Shown: positions 32,901-56,900 of the stretch, in pieces
Layout: each line of letters starts with the position of its first letter
How positions within the stretch are numbered: the first letter of the stretch is position 1
Notes under the pieces: model-generated
What the model saw: only the letters and a program-made list of their open reading frames with translations
Database searches by the model: none
Told to the model about the DNA's origin: nothing
Assembly: GCA_965649765.1 (NCBI GenBank)
Contig: OZ287751.1
Coordinates: forward strand, 73,532,001-73,596,000
Source of the DNA: Bispira polyomma
Lineage: Eukaryota
DNA length: 64,000 nucleotides
Direction: 5' to 3'
Translations under genes and position numbers: made by a program

Positions 32901-35900
32901 CTGAGACGCTTTGGTTTTATATATGAAAAAACAAACTGAATGTTCCATATCCTCATCTTTAAAATATGAATAAAGTGGACATTTTTTTCAGATAATAGCA
33001 GTTTACCTAGATGTCCGTTGGCCAGTCTCTTGAGTACACAGTGTTCCTCTACTCCAGATGGAGACTTGATGGTAGAGGTCAGGTTACTGATGTCTGCCTC
33101 CGTAACCTTCAGAGAAATCTCAGAACTTGTCCCCACAGACACCTGCGCCCTCTGGCGGTCACTGCTTGGTGCTAAACGGAGAATTAGGTCAACATACAAT
33201 GTGATTTTATACATATAGAATCAGGTAAACATTTAGATATTTATACATGTCTATATAATCAATTAAATAGATGTAGTACATATTTACTGAAAAATCGCTC
33301 TAAAAAGCCCATTTTTTTTGTAAGAGCAAACCCCTAATTTTATACACACAGTTAAAATTTTAATTGATAAAAGCACCTGGTTATAACAGCCCATCTCTTA
33401 TTTTGTCTAAGTAAACAGCCCATGGGCTTTATGAAGAGAGTTTAGATTATACTCTAGCATGTTCAGACAGCATCAAAGTTATTTCACTGGCCAACTTCAT
33501 GTGACACAATGGCGTAATATTTTCTAATATGGAGATTTATGCGACTATTTTGCCTTAGTTACCTAGATTCCAGTTATTTTTTGCCAGTTTTGATTGATTT
33601 GGCTTAAATTTTATGGATGGCAAATTTTAAGATTCTTTACTCGCAATCTATTTTAAACAAAGCTATTTATGCAAGTATAACACTGGCCTTTGAGCAACTT
33701 ACAAGGACTGGTGATCTTGGCTGTGTATGGGGATCCAGTGATGAACTTGTCTGCAAACTTGATGACAATACTGTACTCTCCTGGCATGGTTGGCATGTAG
33801 GTCACAGAACAGGTGCCGTCTTTGTTGTCTACACAGTTGATCTCAGCTTTAGAGGGACCTTCTACAGCCAGGGACAGGCCACCTGGGGGGATAGAGGGTG
33901 TGGTGTAATAAATAATGTATAGACAGTTGTTCTCAGCCTTAAAAGGGCCTTCTACAGCCAGAGACAGGGATATAATAGGCATTCAGAGACCCATGGATCA
34001 TTCAACACATCTCAGATGTGATGTAACAAACTAGTTAGATCGGATAATCTGTCTCTTTTAGCGAGATTCCTTGATGCTATTCAACGGCAATGCAGGCAGC
34101 TCTGTCGCCAATCGCCATTCCATCAATAAACAACAGACGTCAATTGGAGGCAGAACACTTGGTCCAACCTCCAGTAAACCACAGTCTCTAGCCAAATTTT
34201 CATTTATTTTCCCTCACAGAAGTGCATACTAAACCTCAGACAATTGCTACCCCACTCCTGGGCGGTTGGACACAATACGGCACTGGCGGAACCATTCTTT
34301 AAGTTCTAAGCAAATATTCAATAAAATTATTTTTCTGTAAAACAAACCAGGAAGTATAACAATTAATCTGTCAGGACAGATACTCCTTAAAGTTATAGCG
34401 TCAGTGACCACAGAGATATCAAAATTTAATCTATTCACCCAAAAACTTTTAATTTCACTCGTGTACGATTGGTTTGTTTGTCACTAGGATTACACAAACA
34501 TTCTGTACAGTGTAAATGAATTTTGCAAAAGATCCAAGTAGATGGGTGAATCAATTAAGTAGTTGTGTTTTCTTAACTTTTTTGCATTGTGACACCTTGG
34601 CGGCGGTATGAAATCTACTGAGTGCCCTTTTTAGCTGATTAGATATCACCACCTAATTAAATAGGATCCCCTAACCTGGACGCATTAGTTACCAAACTTC
34701 ATCAAAAACAAACATACCTGCTCCTGCATCCTTGGTGACAATAGTGAACTCGGTGGGGTGCCCAGCTACACCGTGACTCAGACCTGGACCATAGGCGTAC
34801 ACCTTCCCAGGGGTGGGGGTGTCTACATAGAACTACAATAGAGAGACAGGGAGTTAATGAAGTACACAAACTACTAAGACCTTGGACATACCTTTAATAT
34901 ACACTAAAACCTGACATGTTTCACTGTTACACATTTATCGATCCTATTGTTTTAAACTAAAATGTCTATACTCTGTTCCAATGTTTTTAGTGATGGTCAC
35001 TCTGTCACAAAGGTTTTCAGTGATGGTCACTCTGTCACAAGGGTTTTCGGTGATGGTTATACGGTCCCCAAGTCTCAAGGACTTGACCATTGAGTCCAAC
35101 AAGAAAACTTTTGGTTTAACTTCGATGTTCATAATCCTATTTAGACTTAAATATACTGGTATATCAGAGGCAGATCTAGGGACCTAGAAGACACACCCCC
35201 AAATCTTCTTTAACACATTTCCTGTTTAAATCAATAAGCACATTTGTAATTCTCACCTGGAAGGGGCTTCCACTGATGGGTTCATTATTGTAGGCCACAT
35301 CTAGTTTGTGGAGTCCAATCTCTGAAGGCTTGTAACGGATGGTCACTGTACCGTCTTTGTTATCGTCCACCTTGGGGTAGTGCTTCTTTCCAGAAGGAGT
35401 GGTCACCACCACTGTGTATACGGAGGGAGAACAAGTATAGACTTCGAGCACATCAGGGTATCCATGGTAAACTAAACTTAAGCTAGAACTCATTTGATTG
35501 ATTATTGGGGTTTAACGTCGCTTTTAACACATTGTATAGGTCACATCATGATGGGCATTATTACTGGTGGGGGAAAGCAGTGTATACCAGTTGGTCAAGA
35601 TTCTGCACTGTAAACCTTGAAAGAGGCTTGCCTGGGATTCGAACCGGGGCTTTTGCGGATCTTGAGATTAATAGTCGCATGCACTAACAGTTGAGCTAAA
35701 GGGGAAACCCTCAGAAGCCCCAGCCTTTAACGCACTGAGATACACTGATATTAAAAAAACCCTAAATCTGTTGTATTCAATTAGTAGACCTACTACCTGG
35801 GTCTGTAGTGGTGATCTTTAAATTACAGCAGAACCTTTATTATCCAAACTTCCATTGTCCAAATATTTAATTTTGATTAACTTAATTTCACTGTCCCAAA

Positions 35901-38900
35901 TTTGCATTTAGGTATTGATTCATAGTAAAATGCCTCTTCTATTTTATGAACATTCTATTACCTCAACAGATTGTTACTCTAAGGTATTTGGCTAATAAGA
36001 TATTTCTACAGTTCAAAATCAAACTGTAATTCATTTTCTCAATGTGGAAATATCCAATGGTTGTTGAGGTTGTATTCCAATAGTATAGCTTTTAATGTTG
36101 ACCTGGACTATGGACTAAGATTGCCTGTTTTTACTGTTGGCAGAAATTATATAGCGAGACCAAAGGGCTTGTATTTATCAAAGTTGTCAATTTCACAATA
36201 ATCTCAAAATATGTCCAGCTATATCTTTGTTTACAAGCGAGATGTCTAATAACAGACTACATACTGGAGTTCTTAACTGAAAGCTCTATGAAAATGAATG
36301 GTTATTGTATGCCTTGGGTATTGTGTGGGAGTTTATACCTTTGCAGAATTGGATTTCATCCCTACTCTTTAGTCTGGTACACGTATTACGCTGCTGGTTA
36401 CCCACAGTCCGACTTAACTGCTACCCCTACCCTCATTCCATCCCCCCCCACCCACCCCGCCCCACACACACACACTTACCTGAGACAAAACCGTCACTCC
36501 TCACCCCCCACACTTACCTGAGACAAAGCTGAAGATGGGTCCCACAGGTATACAGAAATCTACTGGTTCCAGTAAGTCAGAGGACACGGGTGCGCTCCTT
36601 ACTGAGTCCACTTGATCTGGCATAATCATGTCCTCCCCAGCCTGGAGAGAGAAACATGGCACAGGTTATAATACAGTAGTAATACAGCCTCTAGTACACA
36701 AACACTGTGTGAACAGAGAAGATAGGTCAAGTATAAAATAAGAAAATAAGAGAGAAATAGTCAAATTGGGGAGAGGGCAGAAAAACAAGTTCCTAAAATG
36801 TAATACAGTAGACTCTATAGGAGTGTTCATAGGATTTGGTTCTACTTATGGTCAACTTGTACTTATACCTAATTTTTTTTTTTTTTTATTAAAAACTAGT
36901 ATTTTTGAATATGGGAACAAGTTAAAATTGGTTCTAGTTACACAGAAAGTTGAATTATTATACTGGTTCTACATTACAGAGAGTCAACTGTATTGACGTG
37001 ATAAAGAGGTTTGGATATAAGAGGGACTAGAAAGTGGGTCTCATTCAAAATGTAAACACTAAATGTATACACTCCTCCTGTTGGTAAATATCAATGGAGG
37101 ACTGATCCTAATAGAAAAAGGGAAACCAAACAAAAAGGCATATAAAATGTTAATTGATAAGGTTGTGATGAAAAGTAAACAGGACCAGGTAACTATGAGC
37201 ATGTTTGTCTTTGTTGGTCAGTGCATCCAAAGCATAAGAATCAGGGTTGGAACCACAAGGATGTGCTCCTCTGAGTTTAAAATTGCTTCTTTTAACTATC
37301 CTCTTGAGCACGATTTCAAAGATGGCGGCCAATATCCGCATCAAAAATTAGAAATCAATTTTAAATGGTTTATTAATTTTTTAATGTTTTATTTGGAAAA
37401 TTAGACATTTAGAGCACCATCCATTTTCACCTCTTTGTTTACTATATCAGTCAGTGCAAACTTTATCTGCGGAGCACTGGATGCACAAAGCCAAACACGC
37501 TCTATAAGACTGCGCCCCACTCTAATCCATATATTCACATGTTTAGAATATACCTTATCTCAAAAAACTGAACTCTCTACTCTCTCTAAACAAAAAAACC
37601 TAAAGGTGAATGTTAAAACTCCACTGCTTTTAATGACATCATACTAACTTTTTATTTTAGTGTATTATCCTTAAAATTGTTGGGTTTTTAATGTCAGTTT
37701 TTTACAAATTACCCATTATAGTAAAAAATTAAAACTAGAAAATCTGTCAATTGACTTAAAGAGCAATGAATCTATTATTAAACATTGAAATACTTTTCTA
37801 ACTTTTGTCACTATAGCTACAATATACACTACTGCCCAGGTCACTCTAACATGTTATCACCCAAAACGTAAGGTTACTATACTACAAGCTACAAAACAGC
37901 AAAGTCCTAAAAACAACTGGAGATTTAGCTATTAAAACATGTACTGAAACTAGAAAACTACCATTAATAGAGTTATACACAATATGTAAGTAATTATATC
38001 AACTATATTAGTAACAAAAAAAAACACATAAAAACTAAATCTGCTGTCTCTAAAACAGGAAAAAAACACAAAAATATCCAGGGACCTCTATTTAGCACAG
38101 GTTTCAAACTTAAACTCACAATTATCTCAAAACAACTGCTGTATCTGTATGAAAAATAGATATCTAAAATGTGACTACATATTTGAGTTCCTCCCTGTAA
38201 GTTCTGTTAAAATGAATCGTAACATGTCTTGGTTCTTCCCATTAATAAGGAAATTGATACATGTTGTTTATGAGTTTAAGCATGAGTTTAAGACCACTGA
38301 TCAATACAAACCCTGTAAACATACGGTCAATCTTCCACAAAGCCACTTCTTGGCAAGAAATTATCAAAATTTCATGTGGGGACAGAAACGAATATATATG
38401 TTGTGACAGAAATGTCAAACATGACAAGATATGACATTCTGTTGACAGAAACTCCAATCCTAGTTGATTTAACAATCACACGCATATTTAACTTAACGGG
38501 TGTTGGATTACTTCAAGTAAAATTTTAGATTACTTCTGTAAGTAATTAACACTACACTGACATGAAATTTTGTCATGTTTACCAATGGATTGTAGTACCT
38601 ATTATTATTTGTTGTCTCATTTCTCCTTTTTTTAAACTGACAATTGTATATCTCTGTCCAGTGACTGAAGTAAAATACTAATTTGGGGCTGGCGACTGCT
38701 TGCCGAGAAACAAAGTTCCTGCGAATAACAAACACTGTCGACTGCTAGGCCACAATGTTGTTGTTAAAGTTTATCTAGCTGAACACACACACCCTGGCAT
38801 GACAACCAATTACAATTTAACTATGTTTTAACTTCTGAAGCAATATTAATGATACCCTTTGCTGATTTATCTTGGGGTACAGTAATTTAGATGATTTCTC

Positions 38901-41900
38901 TTGGGGTACAGTAATTAAGATGATTTCTCTTAGGGTACAGAAATTAAGATGCAAATTATCATGAAATAGAGAGTCACTGTTAGCTGAGAAAACAGTGATG
39001 TATTATGAAAATCTGGCTGGACATTTGTGCACATTGGTACATCCAATGGACTGTGCTGCTCTATACTATTGCTGGAACTGATGAATAATTTAGTGCAGAC
39101 TGCATAGGAAGTAAACACCTAGAGATATACTCAAAATGCCAATCAGGCCTGGTGTAATCAGTGGGTCATATACAGAAAATATGAACTTAAGCTGAATATA
39201 CAGTAGAAATGGTTTACACAAAAAAGTTTCTGCACTTCGCAAATATATAATATACTAGGTGCAGCTATATTTGTTTTATGTGCAAAATTTCAACATGATA
39301 GAGAAATTAGAATATTATTGATTTATTCAGCTTGAAGACCAGACACAGAAAACTATCACTGTTGAGTTGAATTAGAACAAAAGTTAAGTTGGGTGTTTTT
39401 TTCATTTTGTGCTGGTAGATTAGACAGCAAATTAGACAGAAACTTACACAATAGAATTAAAGAAGTATAAAACACATACTTTACACTGATTTTCTATATA
39501 ATTATCTTAGTATGAACAGACTTATGCATATGTGTAGGGCTAGATATAATGAAGTAATCACAGAAATTATATATGTACCATAATTATTCATATAAAATTC
39601 CAGGGCGTTGTATTTTTCCAAAGATTGAGAATTTGACTGCAGTGGATGACAATTAAAGTAAAGTTGCATTTCACAACACAAATACACTGTAATCAAATCA
39701 CCTACCTTATGTTAGTTTTATTATTTAAGATTCCGGTTACTAAGTAGGCTAATACTAGCACTGCTTTTCCAACAAAATTCCACATATATATTAACTAAAA
39801 TACTTTTTTTAAACAAACTTAAATCTGCAACAGACATTAAAATTTTTCTCTATGATATTATAAACTAGTAAAAAAAGTTAATTAAATCTATAACTGAAAC
39901 AAACTACAAAAAAAGAAAATAATAATAAAACCTGTTATTAACAAGTATTACAAATATTAAGACACACACAAAATAAGAAAAACTGCACAAATCTTGGAAT
40001 AATATATAAACACACAAAGAGACATAGAGATCATTATCAAACAAATTCATGAAATACACCAATTTCAACAACAAAAAGTAGAGAAATCAATAGTAAAAAC
40101 ATCAAAAAGAAAAAGTTTTATTTCACAATTAAATACACCTATATAACAACCACATTAAGATTAGTTAATAAAGAAAGAACACAGATGTGCTAGTAGTGTG
40201 CGTACATAAAAAACCCTGTAAAAAGTGCATGTTTGTGCATCCTTTGCTTGTATTAAAGTCTCAAAGAGGAAACTCTACAATGAGCAGTAATACTAGTAGT
40301 AGTAGTAGTAAGTAGTAATATAAGGGGCAGCGTGTGATGTCGTGTATGTATATATACCAGTTTTTCTGCCAATCGTTCCTCTTCCAAGATCCTAAGGTAT
40401 TCTTCAGGGACTACTGCCTGTGTGGATGTATATATAGAGACACACACTCAGAAATACATGCAAGCAACAACTCTCTTATTAATAAATCACTATACCACCA
40501 AAAACCCTCCGCAATTAGGTCCCTAGTATGTCTGCTAACAAGCAACGACTCAACGATCCACAGCAAAACCCTAAGCAATTAGGTCCCTAGTATATCTTAC
40601 CTATGAAGCCACCTAACAAGCAACAACTCAATGATCCGCAACAAAACCCACCGCAATTAAGTTGCTAGTATGTCTTAACTTGAGAGCCAGCTAACAGGCA
40701 ACAACTCAACGATCCCTATTCAAAACCCTCCACAATTAGGTCCCTAGTATGTCTTAAACTGAGAGCCAGCTAACAGGCAACAACTCAACGATGCCTATTT
40801 AAAACCCTCCGCAATTAGGTCCCTAGTATGTCCTAATTATGAAGTCACCAAACAATTAACGAATCAACGATCCACAACAAAACCCTCCACAAGTAGGTCC
40901 CCAGTATCCAATACACACCAAAACCGCTGCACTTAGGTCCCTAGTAAGTCTCACCTTGTAAGCAACCTAACAAGCAATGGTTCTCTTAGCTATCACTACC
41001 ACTAAACCCCTCTTTACTAAATCCCCATTACATCCTAACTCGGATGAAATGATGACTCTTTTAATCAGGACATCAGTAAGTATGCTTTACTTTATTTTCA
41101 CTTCCAGATTTCAAATGTTGATTATAAATTATTCTCAGAAAGCTTAATCATGATCCCTTGTAGTAATTTGCAATAAACCCAAAGCACTGGTGCTTAAAAA
41201 TAAGGAAGTGTGCATGTGACATGCAACAGCAAAATGTACAACTGATCAGCCAATAAAGGCATAAAAATATAACAAAATTATTGGAAGTTGAGTTGTTGAG
41301 GCCTTGACATACCATATAGAGAGTAAGAATTCTTTTCTTCAGTGCCTCAGGGTCAAACTTAGTTTTTAGCTGGCTGGGTGACATTACTGGACTTGCAACA
41401 TCTCTATTAGCCCCAGAAAACCCTGGCTCGCTAATATTGGTTTGTTGAGTGTAACTGGTTTCCCTTTTTGCGTAATTCTTCGGCCGTATTGGTGCTAGCC
41501 GTTCCTCCCACAGTTTATAGTATGCATGAAACGGGCTGGAGGGGTCTTTACTATCAGGGCTTTTGATTGGACTCCTTAAGTTGTTCAATGGACTTTTAAA
41601 ACGATTGTCTATTTCTGATCCCCAATCGGCTGAAATTTTGTCAGGACTCTTTATGCCATTTACTGGACTTTTTATGCTGTAAACAGGGCTTTTTAAACCA
41701 CTGTTTTGTGGAAGTGTGCTTGAGCCATGGGCCCCTGACAGTGGATTATCTTTGTGCTGGTTTCTGCTATAGGTGGTCTGTATTCCACTCAAACCTTTAT
41801 TTCCGCCATAAGTACTACTGGATCCGGTTGTATATTTGGAATCACTCTTCTCTGGACTTTTGCCAAAACTGGTCCTGATGTTACTTAATCCTGTGGGAAT

Positions 41901-44900
41901 TTTATTTGGGGTGTTAGGCCCTTGTGAAAAACTGGTGCCAAGAATTTTTACTGGAGTGTTTGTTGTAGAACTGGTAGTTGGGCTACCTCTGTATGGACTC
42001 TCGTACACTGCCGATCTCTGAAGCGTTTTTGAACCCGAATAGGAGTCCCCAAATCTTAATGGTGTATATCCAGAATTGGTACTTCTATTTGCAGAAAATC
42101 CAAAATTTGAACTTTTTGAGCTACCTACTTGACTTCGTGGAGATTCTGCCGTATCATTGGATCCGGTATGCCTATTGTTAGATTCTCTATCAGGAACAAG
42201 GCCAAAGAACTTGGCCCTTTCGTGTCTCAATTTGTACGTGCCAGGAAGCTTGCTTTCTATATCTTTACTACTGTCACTGGAGCTTGCAGCGGGATTTCTT
42301 CTGCTATTTGTACTAGATTCCAGTATTTGGTTGTAGGAACCCTGAGCCTTGGTTTCTGGTTCGTGACTACTGTCTAAGCTCTTTACATTACCTGATGAAT
42401 ACGAGGTACTGGGAGATGGAATCCTCTTCTCAGTGGAAGCTGGTATTACAATGCTCTTTATATCATTTACAGAAGATGAAGCCTTGGGGGACATATGGCT
42501 ACTACTTTGATCTGGACTACTTACTGTATGCACATTGTTCCAGGTATTTGGTATTTTGCTCAATTTGTCTAGTGAATCTTTACCAGTTTCTTCTGTTTTC
42601 ATAGAGTAGGAGCCTCTGGAAAACATAGACCTGATTTTACTGAATCCTCCGAATGTTTCAGTTGGACTTTTACCCGGGCTTGTGAGAACCGTGACTGGGA
42701 TCCTGGTAGATTCTGTGGAATCCTTACTCTCACTTGTACTTTCATTGCCAGCCTCTTTCTTGATGAAGGCACTCCTCACTGAACTGCCATCAGGACTTCT
42801 TCTGGGACTTTTTCCACTCTCAGCAAATCTCTTCTGCCCACTGCCTTCTACGGGATTGGGTAATTTGGACATTTTCTTGACCTTAGTCTCAGTTCTAGCC
42901 GATTCTTTCTTTGGACTTGGACTGCTGCATCTATCTGGCGAGTACCTTTTGGATTCCTTCCGTGGGCTGTTTTCACCAGTCCTGGTGACCTTGCAATTTC
43001 TCCTGGGACTACTTGAACCAGGACTATTTCTTGTGGGACTAGAGCTCTCCTGTCTGATTATAGAGTATGTGTATTTGGACTCCTTTTTAGGGCTTCTCTC
43101 ACGACTCTTAGGACTAGAATTGTTACTCCTTGGACTGGGCAGCTGTTTCACTCCACTCCTCTCTGAAGCCTCTGTATTTGTATACACAACTGGTCTGGGA
43201 CTTGGACTTCGCCTATGTGATATGGGGATACCTCTAGCTTCTCTCTTTGGGCTTCCCTCACCACTTTTCTTCCTGTTATACTCGTGACTAGGACTCCTAG
43301 TCGACTGATAGAAGTCTCTCCCCTGTCCATTCCTTTCAGAATTCCCACCATATCCCCCTCTTGTTTGACTTTGAGGTTCGCGGAGCCTCACAACGTTGAC
43401 TTCCTCTGATGATTTCCTTTCAGATCTACCCTCCTTATTAACTACACCGTCCTTGTGGTATCCAAACCCATCTTGCATCGGGCTTCTACTCGGTATAGAT
43501 GAATGCTGGACAGGTATCCGTCTAGCAGCATCAACAGTGGCGCCACCTTTACTGTCGACACCACCTTTGCTTCTCGAATTATAAACAGGGATCCCTTTAG
43601 CACTATAACTGGAATTCATCATTCTCTGGCCGAATGCTGAATGTAAACTGTGTGTTGTCATGGGAACCAGGGGACTTTCCGGTCCAGTTTTCACGATATC
43701 GTAACCAATTACAGGATCTTGTTTATTCTCAATATCATTAACCAAAAGCAGTGGCTGTGATTCTTTTAAAGTCCTGCGGTCAAAACTCCAGTTTTCCTTG
43801 TTCCTGTTGTGAACTGGACTAACTTTGCTGTGCTTTATATGTCTAATAGGAATCTCCATAATTCTCTAAATTTAGGTAGCATGCCTGCATTATTATTTAG
43901 AATATCCTTTATTTAAACTTCACATAAATGTATTTTTGCCCTGAACTTCCAGGTCATTTACTTAAAATGAAGATAATCCTGTATGAACTATAAGGTTGAC
44001 ATTTCTTAAGTTCTTGATAAATGTATAAGTTCTCTGAACTACGCACTTTTTATAAAAGTAGACTAACAAAACTGTTGTCTTACTAAATGTAGTTTGTGGG
44101 AAAATGCATTTAAAACATATATATATATATCAGCTGCAATAAACCAGTTTTGATATATGTTGTACATGGGAGGTTGTTTATAGCATCCTGGGTTCATTTC
44201 ACAGCTTAGCAGAAAAAGTAGACAATACTTAGGAAGAAATTAATTACACTGCCCTCTCTTTGTAATAAATGTCAAGTTATTTGACATTCTTCACTTCTAT
44301 TCAGAAAGAGATATATTGCACCCCATACCATCGGGCCTTCAGAACCAGGGAACTACAAACATTGGTGGCATCACAAACTTAAAGCAGTATCTTAGCTTTC
44401 GCTTATAAATTCAGAACCAATCATCCTGTGACCTTTCTGTTTTATACTAGACTTGCATCCTACCTCATTATATATTTATTTAAGAGAGTTTTTGCACCTT
44501 AACTTTTATGGTTAACTATAAAATAATAGTTTAAAACAAGACTAAATCCTGCATACTTTACTCTTGACTTAAGTTTTAAAGTGAGTTCCAGTAGTTCTTA
44601 CAGTTTAAGCTCCAAGCCTTTAATCTGCCAGTACAATGACGTCAGCACAGGCTGGTATTTATTTAATCTACCACCAGCTGTAGAATGGTATTTACTTAGA
44701 GATATAAGCCCGCTCAAAAAGGGTCTACCCTTCCTAATTTTATCAGGTACTAGGGAATGTATTTCTCCAAAAAAGTTGATTGATGAAAACGCTAAAATAA
44801 ACCCAAAGCTTGTCAGATCACCAGTGATGAAACAAGAATATTGTGAGAACTGTATAGACTTGTGATGTCATCATCTCACTGACAATAGATGAAAGTTTGA

Positions 44901-47900
44901 ATTAAGTTTGAGCAGTAGGCACACACTGCAGATTACTCTTATTCTAAAGGAAATAACCCTCAATACAACCCTCAATACATTGTACACCTAGGACTGATAT
45001 CCTTAATCAACCGAACACTTCTTAACCTATTGCAAACTCTTTTTATCAATGTATTAGAAAAGAATCAAACAGCTTATTGTTTGTCATATCAAATCTACAA
45101 GAATATCACCAATATTAATATAAAGATTTCGTGTTTTAAAGTTAGTATAAAAATTAAAAGAGCTTGCAGTTTAGAGTGCTCTGCCTTTAATCTGTCACTC
45201 CATTTGTTCACATAAATAGCTTAGGCATCTTACTACTACACTTGCAAGTAAGTTAATATTAAATATACCCATAACAATAGAAATGTATATAGAGTACACT
45301 GCAAGGTTTAATACTTTTTAAAAGAGAGATACAATTGTAAAATGGAAAAACATGCATAAAAGTGCAAAAGTTTTCAAAAGTTTTTAAGAAAAAAAAAGTT
45401 AAAAGATACATAGTAAGATTGTAAAATCCATTCCCAAATGGTCGCCTCCCACTTTCACGTTGGCCTTGCAATTATCTTCGCTTACCCATCTTGCATATCT
45501 TGCAGGTTAAAAATGGCCAACTAATTCCCATATTTCGTCGTGGTCAGTTTTGATCATATTACGGATGGAGGAAAGTATAGTGATGCCCTCTGCTGTGTCA
45601 TGTTCATTGCAGAAATTTAGGATTTTTCTAAATTTCCACAATGGTCATGGAGATCTATGCTTACCCAGGGTTTCAGAAGGAAATCCCTGTGGGATCAATA
45701 TATTATCCTGGTTACTTAGAGGGATCTCTATGCAACCAGCTAATCATCATCGTTGGTTAAACTCTTATAAGTGGGAGGCGGGCATAAGGAAAAATAGAGA
45801 TGCTTAAAACTTGTGTATATAAACTAAACATATTATATATAATATAAGACAATTTTATACAGCACTGAAATCAGATCACAACAGCTTTAGTATGCACCAA
45901 GATTCTTTAAACTGATGCTGCTGTATACTTAAATATAGTTAACTCTATTACAAGCACTGTTTCCATATAACATATACAACTAAAACTTTTCAATGTCACA
46001 TTTTCTGTAAAGCCTCTCAGAATTTATTCAATTAATTGAAGAAAAAAAAACTTATGTGACTTGTGTACAATGTCAAAGTAGTAAAATGTTGGAATCATCA
46101 GCACGGAATAACTCCAGACACAATACATTCTTAACAATTGTTGTAAACTTACTAAGATTAAAATTCACTTCACAGAAATCAGATATAGTGTTTACAGTAG
46201 ACTGTATAAATAGAACCAGTTTTAAGGTCCCAACATCAGAAAATGCTATATTTTTGTTGGTACAAGTGGAAGTTAGCTATAACTAGAACCCAATACTGTG
46301 GATATTGGAGGTTCTAATTATGCAGAGTATACTGTAATATATACATTAATTGAACTGTATTCAACAGAATAATATAATTTATACCATTATTTCAATGAGA
46401 AAACACAACAGACTGCAATAAAATTCTTTTAAAATTTGGTACATAATTTTTCTTAGCATGTAACTTGCATCATTTAAAAATGTATTTAGAAAGGGGCAAT
46501 TGCACTAAATAGAGGTAACTTTTAATGAATTCTAAAAGTCTGGCACTATTTTAACAAATCTGACCTCTGTGAACCTGTTAACTAATTAACAATACTAAAA
46601 ATTGCTTATAATTTAAGACTTTTTACTAAATTAGAAACAGTGAAAGTTGCACCCACCTCCTGTACAATCTCCCCATTGGGAACAGGCTGTCCACCAAACT
46701 TGATACTCAGGGTGTAAGCGCCAGGGACACGTGGGGTGTACATAATGCTCACTGTACCGTCTCCATTGTCAACTATGTCAATGTCCACATCACTGGTAGC
46801 GTTACTATGGATACGACATGTCACGTTACCATAGCCAGCCTCAGAAGCATTGACGTTGATGACGCATTCTTCGCCAACTGGGATAGTGGTCCTGATACCA
46901 TCTGGTGGTAAGAAACAGAACTACATGTACATGATAGAATGGGAAACTTTATATACTGTAATGTTTACTTATTTATACGCGTGTGATCCCGATACTATCT
47001 TGTGGTGAGAAACACAAGTACGTAATAGAATGGGAAACGGTATACATACTATAACTAGACTTACATAGACTTATCTATACTCATGTGGTCCTGATACCAT
47101 CTGGTGGTGAGAAACAGAACTACATGTACATGATACTGTGGGACGCTGTATACTGTAAAGTTTACTTATTTTTACTCAGGTGGTCCTGATACCATCTGGT
47201 GGTGAAAAACAGAACTACATAATTGAATCGAGCATGTCTAATGCCAGCTTTTCCATATGTATGCCAGAGTGGAAATTTAAACCCATGATTACAGAGGTAG
47301 GAGCCTAGTAGTATGTTACCACTACACCAACGAGGCCCCCGTTATAAATTGTAGAATTTAAAAGAAAGTTTTCTTTGAGCCGAAAAAGGTATCCCCTATA
47401 AAAGAGGAAACTAATTTCTCAACATAGTTTTCTACTTAAGGTATAAAGAGTAATTACATTCTGATGATATATCCTGAAGATGCAACACAAAGTACATCAA
47501 ACATTCTACACCTTTTGTCTGGCAAATCCTCAAACCATAACGTTTTAATCTTAGAACCTCTCAAGATTTCTGTTAAAATTGCCTGGAGTCTCAAAAATAA
47601 CTTAAAAACTAAAAAGTACTATTTACAAATGATTTTTTATTTACATTAGCTTAGAATTTATACTGATTTTCCTCAGGGCATATCTCTTCCGAACTAACCT
47701 GCAATCTTGACTTTGCTGGCGTCCCCAGTTGGACTGGTCATCACACTGAAGGGAGCGCCAGGGACAGGCTGACCACCAAACCTGACCCCCACAGAGTAAG
47801 GGCCAATATCCTCTGGTGTGTAACTCACTCTGTAGGTGCCGTCCCCATTGTCTTCTATCTTTGGGCGCACATAGTTACCACTAGGATCCTGTAACCAGAC

Positions 47901-50900
47901 ACAGCCACATTAATGATCCACAAGTGTCAATTTTTAAAAAGATTTTCAAAAAACTGAATTGTACTGAAGGATGACCCCTTAGCTCCAAATCACTGTTTTA
48001 AATATCAGACGTTTTACAAAAAGTCACAAAAATCTAAGATGGCTACAAAAATTTGAAATTTCGAAAATATTTCAAAACTTAAAATACAGGGAACTCTCAA
48101 GTATCTCCCAAGCTTTTACAACAAAACCATGTTCTATGAAAGCCCACTCCGTACTTAGTTGATGAAAAAATTCCATGTATCACAAAATCTATGTAATATG
48201 CACAAGTTGTAGTATTTTAAGTTCTACTATCCCAATTTTCTTATCTTTCTGTTATGGTATACTTACCTTTGACATTCATGCTACGAAGTCCAAACTGATT
48301 TATATCAAAACTAATTCTGATACTTCCAAACAGTTTAAGATACATTAGTTCAATAGCTTTTGATGTACAATAATCCCAAAAACAAATTGCACCACATTTT
48401 ACAAATGCAGTATTTCTGTCCAGTGATACAGTTAATTGAAGCTCAAATTTTCACCAATTATTTTCATTTTTTTAACAAAATTTTGAATTTGCAAAGCTTG
48501 CACATACATCACGGACCATTTCATAGACTTTTTCATATCCAACAAAAAATTACTCATGAGCCTAGGATGATACATGTTTTACGATTTTTTGCAAACCGTA
48601 ACTAGGAAACTAAAACTATGCCAACAACTATTTATGCATCACTGTAAGCAAGCGTACTTTTCTTATCCACTAACACATCTTTCACAGCCAACAGAAAATT
48701 AACACAAATGACTGGAGATACAATTTTTTTACACTACTGTAACAATACCAAATCACTTCGGCCTGTATGCATCATTACCAACCTGTAAAATGTGCACTTT
48801 CACAAATAAGGCCCCTATTATTACATTCAGAGAATATGATGACTTAATTCTTTCTTAATTGGACATATAAACACTACTTTTTTTGGTTTTTAAATGTGAC
48901 ATTACTGTCATCAGAAATCGAGAGAAATATTGTTTCCTTTCAAAATATAAATGTTTTATACGTCACTTCTTAAGAAAACTTACCATCAGTTTAATGCAAA
49001 AATTTTAAATACAATATTAAGACCAATTCTCCTGCCACCAAATACTTTTCCAGCCTTTTCCGCCTGAAGGTATCCCAATCACTCAGCCCCCTTCTTGTAC
49101 TTGTGAATGTTGTTTCTGATTGATACAAACTCTGCTTAGATAACTTTAAGGACATTTCACACTCCATTAGGTTTCAATACATATTAACTCTCCACCAAAA
49201 TGACAAAGGTTTTCGCACAGCAACAGAAGAACTAAGAATGGATTTACAGCTAATTAAACCTATTTAACTAAAGCCACTAATAAGGCTGTCTGGTTATAGT
49301 CTTTCTGATAAGAGTGATTGTATACAGAGCATGCTCACAAAGAGAATGCACGGAATTATCAGTTTGTTTGAGTAACCAATGCAATGAGGTGAATTATGTC
49401 TGAATATTACAAGATTAGTGATACCATGTGTATCAGATTGGCTCATTTGTCTTTAAAGCCCAACATAAATCACCCTACCTTTTTACATCTTTCTGTACAT
49501 GTGACAATAATTTTTTTAAATGCTGTACTATTGAGAATATGTCTACATCCTTATGTATGCTGTCATTACTGTGTCTGAAAACGGGAACATGTCGCAACAT
49601 TTTCCACATAGTACTATTACCAAAATTTACCGGAAAACAGATCTTAACAGCAGGAATCTTTTAGCTCGAATAAAAACATTTCTACAAAATGAAAACTGTA
49701 AGATTTGTACTTTAACTGTACACCATTGCCCCTGCGCATCTTTACTACACCCTATAGGTTTGGAACTGTACCACAATTTTCTATTTCAAAACAACCACAG
49801 GTATAATTCTGAAACAACAACAATGATGAATTTAGTCAAATCCTGAGAACACCCTGTTTGATCATATAAAAAAATCTTCTCTTTGGGACAGTAAAATAAA
49901 GCAAACTTAATCTTTGCCAGTCTAACAATAAAAGTGTACCCACCCTGATAACGACGTCCAGATCTGCATTTCCAGCCTCTTTAGTGTCCACATTGAAGGA
50001 CACAGGGACACTGGCCAGTACTCCCACTGGTCGCACACCATCTCCAGTCACCTTGACCTTGGAGGGGTCAAATCCGGGCAGGATCTGGGTGTTAAAGGGA
50101 CTGCCAGGCACGTGCTGGTTGGCATAGCGTACTTCCACCTTGGCCTTGCCCTCCACTTGTGGGACATAGGCACAGTCATACATCCCCTCCTCAGGACGGG
50201 GGTGGATTTCTACAGGGCGCCTCTGGCCTGCAAAATAAAAACTAGATCATCAGCAAAACACAGCATAATGCAAAATTTTAAAACTATTTTCAAACATGGA
50301 TAGAGATCAGTCAACTTCAAATGAGTACCCACTACACAGGATTCAGTTAAAATGGTCACTTGCACAAAAGATCACTGTTCTAGACACCACTGTCATGTAA
50401 TCCTTATTTCCTTAGTCTAACATATTTATCTACACATGGAAGTTTATATCTTAGTACAAACATCAAGAGGATGATTTAGCATAGTCAGGGCTGATGATAG
50501 CTATCCTTGGAGAGTGGTCGCATGGCCAAGTTTGACAGCATCTCTTAGCTTTTCCTTTGTGTATCATGTACCATACATTCCTCAACCATCTGATCAGTGA
50601 CCGTAGCCTCCAGTAGAGCAGTCTTTACCTAATTGGTCAGTGTCATTAGTACTCATTACCAGTGTCTTTACTTGGTGGTCCATGTCCAAACTGGTCAGTG
50701 TACTTTACTTACCAATCTGATCAGTGACTGTCGCCTCTAGGAGAGCTTCCCCAGCCTCTGTAGCGTCCACTGTAAACCTTGCAGGCTCCAGCGCTCTCAC
50801 TCCCTTGGGGTCAAGGCCCTGACCTTCACACTTCACCAACCGAGGGTTGATCTCGTCAGCAATCTTCACATTGAAAGGACTGCCAGGGATGTGCTGTAAG

Positions 50901-53900
50901 GTATAAAATCTGGTATCAGAAATATAGTCTTGTATTGTAGAGGAAGAAACTTCTTGTTCGAAATACATTTTAGTCTGTGTTTCCATGAAACAGATGACCG
51001 ACCGCTGATACCAATTCTAATACATTTTGTTTCCATACAAAGTGTCGCCATGTACCCAATGACCGGCAGCTAACTCCGGCTGACTCTGTCAGCATACCTA
51101 TTAACAAAATCAGCCGGAAAAATCACACACACCCATGGAAATACTGCAATCTGGTGTTGGATGTCAGCTATCTGCTGTCAGCTATAAGCAGTCTGTTACA
51201 TGGAAACATAGGCTCATTTTATATACCAATCCCATTTCTCTCAATGTTGCCTCTCTTTTGAGATTTAACATAGATTTTAAAGCATACATCTAAAATCAGC
51301 GGGAAAAAAGATGGTTTTAAATCATATAAGACATGACATTAAATGATTAGCAGTCAACATATAAAATATGTATGGATACAAGTTCCAAGTACTTACTTGC
51401 TCAGCAAACTTGACTGCGATGTCATATTCTCCCTTCTTTGTGGGCAAGTATTCCACAGTACAACTACCATCCCTGTTGTCCCTGCAGGTCATCGTAGCCT
51501 CAGAAGGTCCCTCAATAGCCAGACCCAGCCCTCCTTTACCTGCACCTCGCGTCTCTACAGTGAACTGTTGGTCAGTGTTAGTATAACCGCCCTCAAGACC
51601 TACACAAAACCAGGGACACAGGTTTTAACTTACCTGTGTGTTTAATTATTTTATCAAGCAACACTTTAAATTTACAAAAACAAATGTTTCTCAAGTAAAA
51701 AACATAGTGACCAAGATGACCACCTCGAGTTATTAGGTCCTATTCCCAGTGGCAGGCTAAAGAACCTCAGCAATACTGATAAAGGGTGTGATCTTCAAGC
51801 CTCTCTGTCTCTTTCTTCAGGGAATGGGAATGACAGTTAATGGTGCTAGTTAGCTCTACCCGGGCAGCTAACAAAAGTTTAATTGGCACTTTAAATACCA
51901 GACAAAGGTAGCTGCTACATGCAGAGAGTGTAAATTTGAATGTAATACCTGGACCGTAGGCCTTGACCCTGGTAGGGTCACAGCCAGGGACCACGCCCAC
52001 AGGAAAGGGACTGCCTGGTACCTGGAGACCCTCGTAAGTCACGTCGATCTTGTGCGGTCCTGGTGATGAAATCAAGACATACAGAAGATATATTATAGCA
52101 CTAGTTTACTGAATTTAAAATTTGGCGTTTTGGCATATGAATACACACAAGGCTAAACCTTAAGGAGAACACTAAAACCCTAATGCTGTGGCTATAGTAG
52201 GAAGAACTACTTTTCAATATGGAATTTTAGCCGCAATAATCTGAGCCACTTAGACTTCCAAAAAGGATATCCATTTTATACATTCTATAAAACTATCCAC
52301 TTCTACATCAATCTTAACTAAACACGTACTTGAATATATTTCGCAATGACAAAAAAATTTTTAAATTTATTTTGTGTTTGACATGTTCAATATATATGTG
52401 GACACTTTTTGCTATTGTTGGGACTCAATTTTTACCAGGTCGATTAATCGTAAAGATTTACAACCGACTCACCTACTTACCTACTCGTACTTAATTTTTT
52501 TTTAAGTGCAAGAAATTTCAGATCGGTTTGGTTGTTAGTTTTCACCAAATATAGTGGTAAATAGAGATGACTGCAAGTTTTAACAAATTTGCATTAAATT
52601 TCATTAGATATTAAGGATTTGGTAAACGGATTACAATATTTTTCTTTGCCAGGTTGGTTTTATATAAGTTTATTAGTTTTGGTTAAATAATCGATCAAAA
52701 TATTTTTTCTAACAAACAGACATTTGTGGCTTCTTACACCAACGATTGCTTAGACGTTTGTTCAATTGTCGCAACACTACTTACTATTTTCAAAAGTTAA
52801 CTGACTACCTTAAATGGGTGTACACACACACCCGAATAATTAGGAACTAAACAGTTGTCTCACCTTCTTCAAACGGTGTGTACATGCATTTGTAGGTGCC
52901 GTCATTGTTGTTGTTTGCCAGAGCCTCCATCCTGACTCCAGTCGGTGCGGTTACAAAGGCCTTGACTTTACCCTCACCACTAGGGGTCACACTTGTGGCA
53001 TCCACAGTGAAGTCGGTGGTTGACTCCAGGAACACGCCTAAAAGAAAAGACACAAGATAGAAGTTAAAAACACTTTCAATATACGTGAAGAGCTAGTATT
53101 TTTATAGAACCGTCAGGTTATTAACATAAAATAATCTGAAATACCAAAGTGATTAGGTTTAATTATATCATATTATTATTATTCTTGTTTTCTGACAGCA
53201 GATATAAAAAGATTGTGCTTGAATGATTTCATTATTGATTGCATAGATTAGGAAATAAATTATTGTAAGTTATCACATCACAACTAAATTCACACATTGC
53301 ATGTCAAATACTTGATCCCAAGATAATTATATTTATTTCAGAAATAACGATTCTTTACATTATTTTTTTTTTTTTTTTTTTTTAATTTGGATATTTAACG
53401 TCCACTCTAGTACCTGTTTAGGTTATATTGGGACAGGTAGTTAGAAACGCTGGAAGAAACACTGCATACAGTTGATCAAGGTTCTGCACTGAAACCAGCG
53501 GCACACAGTAAGGAACTACCACCTTTCCCACATAGGTATCGACGGGATTCGAACTCACGCCGCCTAGAGGTGAGAGACCAGTGATTGTGAAGCGCAATGC
53601 TTGCTAACAACTAGGCCACTTGCGGCCCAATTCTTTACATTGTACAAACTAGACCTAGTGCATCGGAGAACCGATGCATATTTGTATCCACCAGAAAGAC
53701 AAAGCACCCTAGGTGGCAAGCACCTTAGGTAACAAGCACCCTAGCTAGCATTCAAGCTAGAAGCCTACGATTTCCTAAAGGGCATTTATGCTAAAGCCTT
53801 AAATGGCACAAATGGGTTTCACATTGCAAACCTGTGGGACCAATATTAAGTGTGAGATAGGCACTTTAAAGTTTGGCCTAACCATTTGACCTTGCACAAA

Positions 53901-56900
53901 TGGTCCAAGGTAAAATCTGACCACAGCAAAAGATTACCCGCCCATGATTTCCTACAGGTTGGTTTCACAACCCAAACCTCTTTGACCAAAAATAAGCATG
54001 ATACAGGCACTTTTAAGTTTGACTAAGACTGACATTGAACGAGAGGCCCAAGGTCAAAACGGACAACATAAAAAGATTCCCAGGTCTTGATTTCCTACAC
54101 GTTGGTTTCATATTCCAAACCTCTAGGACCAACGTTAAGCGAGATATAGGCACTTCTAAGTTTAGCCATCCACATTTGACCTTGAACGAGGGGTCTAAAA
54201 TCAAATCGGAGCACATCAAAAGATTCCCTGCTCATGATTTTCTTTAGGTTGGTTTCAGATCCAAAACCAATATTAAGCGACACATAGGCACTTTAAGTTT
54301 GGCCAAAATCGGTCACAAAGGACGAAACTTTATCACTTTGTCGATGTCATGATGACCTTGAATAAGGAGATTTTTAAGGTCAAATGTCTGCATGCTTATA
54401 CAGGACATATATATCCGTTAAACATATCACAAAAAGAGATTCAACTTTCTACAGCTGAAAAACAGACACAGTTAAAAGCCGGATAATTTTTAAAGAAACA
54501 TCTGTGGCGGCAATCTTGTTTTTTAAAATGACGCTAAAATTACTCCCAGGCAAACTTTTGTAATAAAGAACATTTCCTGTAAATTTCAATAGCCTAGTTG
54601 TAAAAGTTTTTCCAGGAGAGTGGTAAAGGTAAAATCTCTACACACACTGGCGCGGCGGCATACCGAAGCATAAACCAATGAATCCACCATTTTCTGGTTG
54701 CTGCAAATACACATGCAAACAAACCTAGGGAAAAAAACAAAAATAAACTACAAACACAAGCTCAAAAAAGTCAGATCTGCAAACCTGAAAGAAAATGTAC
54801 TAAAGAAACAGATGTCAACTAACAAAACTGTAAACTGATAAGGTTTGTACGAGTATGTACTCGGACAAGGTCTCAATATATACTCTGACAAGACTGCACA
54901 GTGTTGTATGTACATGTATTCAGTCTTGTAATAATAACCAAATGCTACAAACAGTCAACAGAGTACCTGAACAACACATGCTAAAAACTAAAATCTGAAC
55001 TGTCCATTTCAAGAAAAAACAATCCTCCTCAAAGGACAACACTGGAAACAAAAGACAACATCTATAGCAGGGACTGTGTCTCTGTGGTAGTGAACAACAC
55101 TAGATTTGAAGCATGCATTAGGTAAAGATCATTCTACAACAGAACATAATCTAATCACAATCTGTATATATGTTCAAGTTAGTGAGGGGGCGCTTTCATC
55201 TAACAAACACGCACGTGTTTCTTATCCATGCTGACTTAGTGTTATATAACACACATATCAAAACAGCAGGCATGTTGTCAGTGAAGATTACCCGAGGGTT
55301 GGATTCCAGGTCCTGACACCTTGATGCCACTCACATCCACTCTCTTACTGGGGTTGACCTGTGATTTGAATGGAGCGCCAGGGATGGGCTTATCGGCAAA
55401 TGAGATGTTGATGGTGTACTCTCCCGGTTCAGTGGGCCAGTACCTCACATCACAAGTACCATCCCCTCGATCAAACGCGTCAATCTTGGCCTCGCATGGA
55501 CCCTCAATCGTCAGGCCCAAACCCCCAGTCCCGGCTTCACGGGTATCGATGGTGAAATCGGCAGGGGTGTTGGCAATGCCTCCCTTCAATCCAGGGCCGT
55601 AGGCCTTCACTTTCCCAGGGTTGGACTTGGGAGCCGGGGCTTTATCCTTGATTCCCATGACCTTCTTGGGCGTGCCCTTGACTGGCTGGCCAGCAAAGGA
55701 CACGTATACTTGGTGATTTCCGGGCTCGGCCAGCGTAAACTTGGCGCCAAAGCCGTCGATGGTTTCCTCTACCCTGGCGGGCATGCGAGCACCAGACGGG
55801 CTGACTATACTGACTTCTACCTGGCCTTTACCTGCACCGGTCGTTATGATATCAAAGTCCTGCTCTTTACCAATAGGGATTTCTGTGTGTGTACAACAGA
55901 AACACTTAACAGTACCCACCACACATAGAGAAAAGACACTTTTACCTAAGAATCATAGTCTTAGGTAGAAGCTTGATAGTTTGGTCGTTTTTTGTTTTTT
56001 TTTAAAAAATTACAAGAAATAAAGAAGAAAATAGTAAGAAAAGAGAAAAGCAAATGAAATGGTATAAAAAAATAGAATAATGCTCTGCCTGACAGAAAAT
56101 GGTGTGTACAAACACAACACTTGTACACCAATATAGGAAGGGGCGCTTGTAAGGGGAATCTCTCTAGGAAGGAGCTTTACAGTTTTTGTTAAGGCACAAG
56201 GTCGAAATTTAAAGAGAAAAATTACAAGAGAATACAAGAGAGAATAGTAGATGGAAGAAGAGAGAAAAGAATGAACAGGTACATGGAAATACATATATTT
56301 ATCCATTCCTGTAAAAAACAATGATGCACATTGCACAAATATCAGCAGCTTCAATAATACCTAAATCCAGGGAGGGGGAAAAAAAGACTGTAATTTTATA
56401 TCAAACGTACATTATTATTATTATTATGAATTTTTAACACGCTTTATTGATGCCAGGCATCTTCTAAAGCGCAACAGCAGAATCAGTGATCCAATCGCAA
56501 AGTCCATGGGCACAGCAAGGTACATGTATATAATATGTTTTTACATATTCTTTGGAAAAATATGTCTTGATGCTACACATTTTTATAGACTTTTGGAGAG
56601 TTTTAGAACATGTCATTCAAGCCTGTACTAATACTCATTCCAGTCCCCACTCATACTTACTGTCATCCAATCCCTGTATCTTGACCTTGCTGATGTCTAT
56701 GCTGGGCACTACTTTGACCTTGTAAGGACTGGTGGGAATCTCCAACTCGGCAAAGAACACGTTAACGTTGTAGTCACCGACGGTCTCTGGACTGAAGTCC
56801 ACCCTGAAGGTGTTGTTCTTCTGGTCAGTAGTCTTGACAGGCACGTCCACTCCTCTCTCATTGGTCAGTGCTATGGCAACATCACCTGAGTGACACAAGG

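What the first reader, a model, noticed from the sequence alone, without database searches (positions are those of the whole stretch)
41313..43865. Giant (~850-codon) disordered alternative exon hidden in the filamin hinge-1 intron
Seen: a stop-free 2.7-kb frame on the filamin strand, in the intron between the repeat-15 exon (donor 46657, phase 0) and the hinge/repeat-16 exon (acceptor 36641, phase 0). After codon 849 there is a phase-0 donor ATG|GTATGT (41313); the remaining 54 ORF codons look intronic. The in-frame TAG 6 nt upstream of the ATG is also a possible phase-0 acceptor (aaatttag|AGA ATT ATG), although its pyrimidine tract is weak. Two isoforms are therefore possible. One is an internally initiated filamin with no actin-binding domain, made of an 849-aa disordered head plus repeats 16-24. 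The other is full-length filamin with an 851-aa hinge insert. Known context: hinge 1 is the alternatively spliced region of vertebrate filamins, and Drosophila cheerio makes a short C-terminal isoform from an internal start. A single hinge exon of this size is not something I recognise.
Basis: partly seen in the sequence, partly recalled or inferred. Interest (0 to 1): 0.88.

Follow-up and report, generated by a model that had tools for sequence, protein, structure and literature searches.

The report
Giant disordered first exon in filamin

Summary
The 849-codon frame is real: single-copy, identical in three DNA runs, and far longer than chance. The genome is a sabellid fan worm; its mitogenome statistics match Bispira sp. 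2. An orthologue (834 aa, 53-56% identical) lies in the same filamin intron of a second species, with dN/dS 0.21. Conservation starts at Met1 and ends at a shared phase-0 donor, so it is a selected coding exon that probably splices on into repeats 16-24. Best reading: an alternative first exon giving an actin-binding-domain-less filamin (about 1,750 aa), like fly FLN90 but with a giant disordered basic head. The head is enriched in [IV]P[IV] (5/5 conserved), SxIP-type and CDK-type motifs. No RNA data exist, so transcription start, splicing and function are inferred. Complete hinge introns of more distant animals lack it, whereas the adjacent 60-nt micro-exon is widespread. The scan noted these motifs only on this same stretch, not on other DNA.

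The parts
41313..43859 (-). Giant coding exon, Met1 to Met849: disordered, basic, Ser/Pro/Lys/Arg-rich head (93 kDa, pI 10); probable alternative first coding exon
41307..41312 (-). Phase-0 splice donor GTATGT; orthologue has GTAGGG at the same codon; the last 15 exon bases are identical in both species
   Evidence: score 7.1, above all 164 intronic GT sites tested; orthologue 4.3
41148..41312 (-). Read-through tail (54 codons, orthologue 9), not conserved; its stop and a nearby AATAAA lie in a dispersed repeat at about 41177-41071
43866..43868 (-).
43878..43887 (-). Conserved CAGGCATGCT, with the AG ending 25 nt before the ATG in both species: possible acceptor for a non-coding leader exon (weak score); contains an upstream ATG
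43835..43882 (-). Out-of-frame 15-codon upstream ORF overlapping the start codon, present in both species
43626..43628 (-). Conserved phase-0 CAG (codon 78): candidate internal acceptor for a hybrid first/internal exon; no excess over other phases
44196..44281 (-). Conserved non-coding block 340-420 nt upstream of the ATG (TGACATTT, TAATTA); candidate promoter or enhancer element
45297..45377 (-). Conserved intronic block with TGCATG (45356)
41220..41250 (-). Conserved TCAGTTGTACAT and TGCATG (41225) just downstream of the donor
40358..40417 (-). 60-nt phase 0-0 hinge-1 micro-exon, conserved (dN/dS 0.16), with a TGCATG 45 nt upstream; homologues in many other animals
46657..46901 (-). Filamin repeat-15 exon (phase-0 donor), upstream flank
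36518..36641 (-). Hinge-1 / start of repeat-16 exon (phase-0 acceptor), downstream flank

Best explanation
The ORF is an alternative first coding exon of the sabellid filamin gene. Inferred: an internal promoter in the hinge-1 intron, about 67 kb downstream of the actin-binding-domain exons, drives a transcript translated from the ATG at 43859. It splices from the donor at 41313 to the hinge/repeat-16 exon, with or without the 60-nt micro-exon. The product would be about 1,750 aa: an 849-aa disordered basic head, then repeats 16-24 with the dimerisation repeat, and no actin-binding domain or repeats 1-15. Shown: the exon is protein-coding, under purifying selection, and bounded by the ATG and the donor in two species. 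Inferred: promoter, splicing, protein and function. Most likely the dimer is a scaffold whose rod 2 binds the usual filamin partners, while the head tethers it through short linear motifs switched by proline-directed kinases. My odds for the head's main role: EB/microtubule binding through SxIP-type motifs 0.3; small heat-shock-protein docking through [IV]P[IV] 0.3; generic anchor or spacer as in Zasp52 0.25; nuclear or DNA binding through SPKK-type motifs 0.15. These roles are not exclusive.
For: The orthologue P0001 sits between the same filamin exons. dN 0.33, dS 1.56, dN/dS 0.21 (bootstrap 0.16-0.28); nucleotide identity by codon position is 0.73/0.73/0.47. dS equals that of the flanking filamin exons (1.51). 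Amino-acid conservation starts at Met1 and stops at Met849|GT. There is an in-frame stop at codon -3 in both species and no shared phase-0 acceptor before the ATG. Both ATGs have a purine at -3 and G at +4. The donor scores above all intronic GT sites tested, and its phase fits both downstream exons. Conserved TGCATG elements and an upstream non-coding block are present. CH-domain exons lie upstream on C4. Motifs: [IV]P[IV] 5 against 0.5 expected, 5/5 conserved (p about 0.002 against the class baseline); [ST]x[IL]P 6 against 1.4; [ST]Px[KR] 16 against 2.9, 12 conserved. Precedent: Drosophila FLN90 (PMC5173320).
Against: No RNA run exists, so no junction, start site or protein is observed. The orthologue's donor score is only moderate (4.3). 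The splice model is crude (about 20 sites). No promoter was located; the 300 nt upstream hold many ATGs, so a leader would need splicing or a close start. Only two species carry the exon. Conservation of the SxIP motifs (4/6) is not above background (p 0.11), one has an acidic residue just before it, and shuffle nulls overstate motif enrichment in disordered proteins.
Confidence: 0.7

Rival explanations
1. Hybrid exon: besides or instead of starting a transcript, the exon is entered from repeat 15 through the internal phase-0 CAG after codon 78, giving full-length filamin with a 771-aa hinge insert.
For: This is the best conserved phase-0 AG in the exon (scores 3.8 and 8.4). A TTTAC branch-point-like word lies about 20 nt upstream in both species, and synonymous identity is slightly raised near it.
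Against: A CAG there is simply a conserved Gln codon. An equally good conserved AG occurs out of phase (6.2/6.6), so there is no excess. Codons 1-78 are the best-conserved protein part (dN 0.13 over codons 1-100), so they must be translated in some isoform.
Confidence: 0.14
2. One reading: a cassette exon using the TAG acceptor 6 nt before the ATG (851-aa insert in full-length filamin).
For: The TAG is an in-phase YAG in this species.
Against: It scores at background and is absent in the orthologue, where the nearest AG gives the wrong phase and an in-frame TAA closes the frame.
Confidence: 0.04
3. A nested single-exon gene that ends at its own stop (41148) and is unrelated to filamin splicing.
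For: It has its own ATG and stop, and an AATAAA at 41096. An unrelated 506-codon frame sits in the same intron of another worm (L091), so nested ORFs may occur there.
Against: Conservation ends exactly at a shared GT. The tails differ (54 and 9 codons) and are unconserved. The stop and AATAAA lie in a dispersed repeat. The last 15 exon bases are identical, including synonymous sites.
Confidence: 0.08
4. Poison or truncating use: repeat 15 splices to the conserved CAG at -25, reads out of frame and stops (after 14 codons here, 2 in the orthologue), giving a decay substrate or a rod-1-only filamin. This would accompany, not explain, the long ORF.
For: CAGGCATGCT is conserved at the same distance from the ATG.
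Against: Weak acceptor scores (-1.7 to 0.2 here, 2.4-3.2 in the orthologue). It cannot account for dN/dS 0.21 over 849 codons.
Confidence: 0.03
5. Chance ORF, transposon remnant or assembly artefact.
For: No Pfam family and no distant homologue.
Against: Single copy, confirmed in three DNA runs, far beyond chance length, and under purifying selection at dS 1.5.
Confidence: 0.01

Closest known systems
Drosophila cheerio FLN90 (PMC5173320)
   Same: C-terminal filamin from a separate shorter transcript, no actin-binding domain, nine predicted Ig repeats; acts as a postsynaptic scaffold.
   Different: FLN90 is about 90 kDa from a 3-kb transcript and is described as the C-terminal portion of FLN240. 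Here a unique 93-kDa disordered head would roughly double the protein. FLN90 is experimentally shown; this isoform is not.
Drosophila Zasp52 exon 15e (PMC13521563)
   Same: A single very large alternative exon (4,429 nt, 1,475 aa) encoding a disordered region in a cytoskeletal scaffold; anchors the protein at the Z-disc.
   Different: An internal exon lengthened by 5' splice-site choice, in a different protein family and with acidic clustering. Here a basic exon that carries the start codon. No sequence homology was tested.
480-kDa ankyrin-G (PMC6839619)
   Same: A large isoform whose tail carries many SxIP motifs that bind EB proteins and tie microtubules to a membrane scaffold.
   Different: Ten SxIP motifs, tested by mutation, and it keeps its N-terminal domain. 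Here six [ST]x[IL]P matches, four conserved, none tested.
BAG3 IPV motifs / small HSP IxI/V motifs (PMC8047445)
   Same: [IV]P[IV] motifs in a disordered region; five, all conserved.
   Different: No WW or BAG domain (no Pfam hit). BAG3 has two motifs and is a separate co-chaperone. Binding is untested here.
Vertebrate filamin hinge-1 splicing (own knowledge)
   Same: Alternative splicing between repeats 15 and 16; the 60-nt micro-exon fits this kind.
   Different: Vertebrate hinge variants are tens of residues; the giant exon appears to begin the protein, not extend the hinge.

Membership tests
Filamin (host gene) | N-terminal CH actin-binding domain | tested here: met
   CH hits at C4:73,643,282 and 73,629,306, same strand, upstream
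Filamin (host gene) | Tandem Ig-like filamin repeats with hinge 1 after repeat 15 | tested here: met
   PF00630 hits along the locus; the flanking exon best matches the second domain of PDB 7OUU
FLN90-type C-terminal filamin isoform | Own transcript starting inside the gene | not testable with these tools
   No RNA run holds the stretch; only a conserved upstream block was found
FLN90-type C-terminal filamin isoform | Start codon downstream of the actin-binding domain, in frame with repeats 16-24 | tested here: met
   Conserved ATG behind an in-frame stop, and a phase-0 donor matching phase-0 acceptors, in two species
FLN90-type C-terminal filamin isoform | Consists only of the C-terminal part of the long isoform (about 90 kDa) | tested here: not met
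   Adds a unique 849-aa head, so it works like FLN90 at most and is a variant
Internal giant cassette exon (hinge insert) | Conserved in-phase acceptor upstream of the coding frame | tested here: not met
   TAG acceptor unconserved and at background score; in-frame stop at codon -3 in both species
Internal giant cassette exon (hinge insert) | In-phase acceptor inside the exon (hybrid exon) | tested here: inconclusive
   CAG after codon 78 scores 3.8/8.4, but there is no excess over other phases
SxIP-type +TIP | SxIP motif in a disordered region rich in basic, Ser and Pro residues | tested here: met
   SKIP at 434, SKLP at 331 and 536, plus non-canonical NKIP at 652, all conserved; net charge +57; context as defined in PMC3649978
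SxIP-type +TIP | Motifs conserved above local background | tested here: inconclusive
   4 of 6, p 0.11
SxIP-type +TIP | EB binding and plus-end tracking lost on SxNN mutation | not testable with these tools
   Needs experiment; flanking residues decide affinity (PMC12695022)
IxI/V small-HSP ligands (BAG3-like) | [IV]x[IV] motif with central Pro in a disordered region | tested here: met
   Five motifs at 3, 90, 115, 211 and 387, all conserved, 0.5 expected
IxI/V small-HSP ligands (BAG3-like) | Binding to the alpha-crystallin domain groove | not testable with these tools
   Needs experiment
BAG3 family | WW and BAG domains | tested here: not met
   No Pfam family in either head

The most novel reading that the evidence does not exclude
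Fan worms have replaced filamin's actin-binding end with a giant phospho-regulated disordered head that binds EB proteins/microtubules (and perhaps small heat-shock proteins), so that the same gene makes a dimeric microtubule-to-membrane linker as well as the usual actin crosslinker.
Probability: 0.22. Interest if true: 0.82.

Novelty: new variant of a known kind. Interest (0 to 1): 0.62.

Why it matters
If spliced as predicted, this is a filamin architecture I found no description of in the searchable literature (subscription journals are mostly missing from that library). Half of the protein would be a lineage-restricted disordered domain. It would be a datable case of a 2.5-kb coding exon present in one worm lineage and absent from the same intron in others, held at dN/dS 0.2. 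It gives direct tests of whether a filamin rod 2 can be redirected from actin to microtubules or chaperones. Gene predictors are likely to miss it or call it a separate gene. The limits are its narrow range (two species so far) and the lack of expression data.

Tried and rejected
RNA evidence: no RNA run holds the stretch; DNA contigs showed no variants in the ORF, so no polymorphism test was possible. Distant homologues of the head: phmmer of the C-terminal 196 aa against 1.84 billion representatives gave only P0001 plus one weak primate low-complexity hit (E 5.5e-4, 25% identity), rejected as chance. Word-index searches of the whole head and of residues 1-82 gave only P0001; these see only proteins of about 500-1,580 aa, so the predicted 1,750-aa isoform itself was out of reach. 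A JGI scan found nothing; the ESM Atlas gave no usable hit. No paralogue or transposon copies. No internal repeat by self-BLAST. No conserved CArG or MEF2 site. TGCATG is not enriched in the intron overall (3 forward, 3 reverse); only its positions are conserved. The L091 ORF is not homologous. No fold search was run, because the model is low-confidence.
Full report
Observation. The minus-strand frame 43865-41151 is open for 905 codons, with ATG at 43859. The other five frames carry 26-87 stops, and composition-matched simulations never exceeded 234 codons. The stretch is single-copy at protein and DNA level. It is identical in 4.67-kb contigs of three DNA runs from at most two samples of one study. 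The first 849 residues are 18.6% Ser, net charge +57, pI 10, and have no Pfam family. AlphaFold2 gives 789 residues under pLDDT 50 with a few short helices; with a two-row alignment this is consistent with disorder but does not prove it.

Host gene and organism. The flanking exons encode filamin repeats. The upstream exon best matches the second domain of PDB 7OUU, which I know as filamin-C repeats 14-15, and CH-domain exons lie about 53 and 67 kb upstream of the ATG. The intron is therefore hinge 1 of a full-length filamin. The mitochondrial contig is 15,503 bp with 38.7% GC and skew 0.22; cox1-3 and nad3 lie on one strand and the other genes found lie on the opposite strand. These figures match 'Bispira sp. 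2' in PMC13602327 (15,503 bp, 38.8%, -0.22, type III). The animal is thus a sabellid fan worm, by statistics rather than by sequence comparison.

Orthologue. One relative exists in the protein collections: P0001, 834 aa, 53% identical. It lies on a 1.4-Mb ENA contig (L006), between the same filamin exons. Over 806 codons dN is 0.33, dS 1.56 and dN/dS 0.21 (95% 0.16-0.28), and third codon positions are the most diverged. Flanking filamin exons have the same dS (1.51) and dN/dS 0.03. The frame is a selected, fast-evolving coding sequence.

Boundaries. At the 3' end, conservation stops at Met849. Both species have GT next, the last 15 exon bases are identical, and the read-through tails differ (54 and 9 codons). 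The window's stop and a nearby AATAAA lie in a dispersed repeat. In a splice model built from this gene's own exons the donor scores 7.1, above all 164 intronic GT sites tested; the orthologue scores 4.3. It is phase 0, as are the micro-exon and the repeat-16 acceptor. At the 5' end, conservation starts at Met1, and both species have an in-frame stop at codon -3. What is conserved upstream is CAGGCATGCT at -25. Used from repeat 15 it would shift the frame and stop, so it could only serve a non-coding leader exon. It also holds an ATG that opens a 15-codon overlapping upstream ORF in both species. A conserved non-coding block lies 340-420 nt upstream. One conserved in-phase CAG after codon 78 could act as an internal acceptor (3.8/8.4), but an equally good conserved AG occurs out of phase.

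Range. Hinge-1 introns covered from repeat 15 to repeat 16 or beyond show no similarity to the head and no plus-strand frame above about 205 codons. These are L008, L010, L011, L012, L013, L053, L090 and L092, and several JGI contigs such as L030, L036 and L048, which I take from their accession series to be gutless oligochaetes. L007, L009 and L015 were only partly covered. The 60-nt micro-exon, by contrast, has candidate homologues in nine fetched loci, seven with GCATG within 65 nt upstream. Intron-less, transcript-like contigs of other animals either skip it (L023, L050) or include it (L066, L068). The micro-exon is an old hinge cassette; the giant exon looks lineage-restricted, on thin sampling.

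Mechanism. The best-supported reading is an alternative first exon: internal transcript, translation from 43859, splicing from 41313 into repeats 16-24. This gives about 849 + 20 + 885 residues, the last figure taken from the L023 guide protein. The coding status and boundaries are shown; promoter, splicing and protein are inferred, because no RNA run exists. The head has five [IV]P[IV] motifs, all conserved (0.5 expected; p about 0.002 for conservation). It has six [ST]x[IL]P matches (1.4 expected; four conserved, not above background), sixteen [ST]Px[KR] sites (2.9 expected; twelve conserved), eight KSP, and three SP[KR]KES repeats. An earlier scan note on this stretch (s1-596239) named the first two motif classes; I tested their counts and conservation, not their binding. 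SxIP motifs in basic Ser/Pro-rich disorder bind EB proteins (PMC3649978, PMC12695022), and IPV motifs bind small heat-shock proteins (PMC8047445). SPKK-type words also occur in DNA-binding sperm proteins (own knowledge), and C-terminal filamin fragments can act as co-activators (cited in PMC5173320), so a nuclear role is a real alternative. Shuffle nulls overstate enrichment in disordered proteins.

Comparison and verdict. It would work like Drosophila FLN90 (no actin-binding domain, scaffold role) but is not simply an FLN90, because it adds a unique 93-kDa head. Giant disordered exons are known in Zasp52, and SxIP-rich giant isoforms in ankyrin-G. I found no report of such an exon in a filamin, within a library that lacks most subscription papers. 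Verdict: real, conserved, probably a first exon; a new variant of a known kind; interest 0.62.

Noticed in passing
L091:8833-10350 (+): An unrelated 506-codon stop-free frame (57% GC, basic stretch, one strongly hydrophobic segment, mean KD 2.75) lies downstream of the repeat-15 exon of another worm and has a phase-0 GTATAG just before its stop. No Pfam hit, no similarity to the head, no match in this genome or in the other fetched loci. It could be a nested gene or an independent large exon; the contig ends before repeat 16.
   Followed up: partly
window 40358-40417 (-): The hinge-1 micro-exon has candidate homologues across many animals with GCATG (Rbfox-type) motifs just upstream; it is included in some transcript-like contigs and skipped in others.
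   Followed up: partly
G000:C75 (L021, L022): Mitochondrial contig with protein genes on both strands, matching the statistics of Bispira sp. 2 in PMC13602327.
   Followed up: yes
window 40534-40907: 79-bp tandem repeat, 4.7 copies, between the giant exon and the micro-exon.
   Followed up: no
window 45440-45770: Very high-copy dispersed repeat with inverted-repeat character inside the hinge intron.
   Followed up: no
window 33920-33968 and 59289-59910: Partial duplicated echoes of neighbouring filamin exons; the scan has a note on similar echoes at 50584-57609.
   Followed up: no
window 40803-45472: A 4.67-kb unbroken contig without variants in all three DNA runs suggests low heterozygosity here, or that the runs come from one individual.
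   Followed up: no
G000:C10 5.84-5.98 Mb, C8 16.88-16.92 Mb, C3 41.99-42.00 Mb, C14 20.54-20.55 Mb: Further loci with filamin repeats, three of them (C10, C3, C14) with a CH domain nearby; possible filamin paralogues.
   Followed up: no
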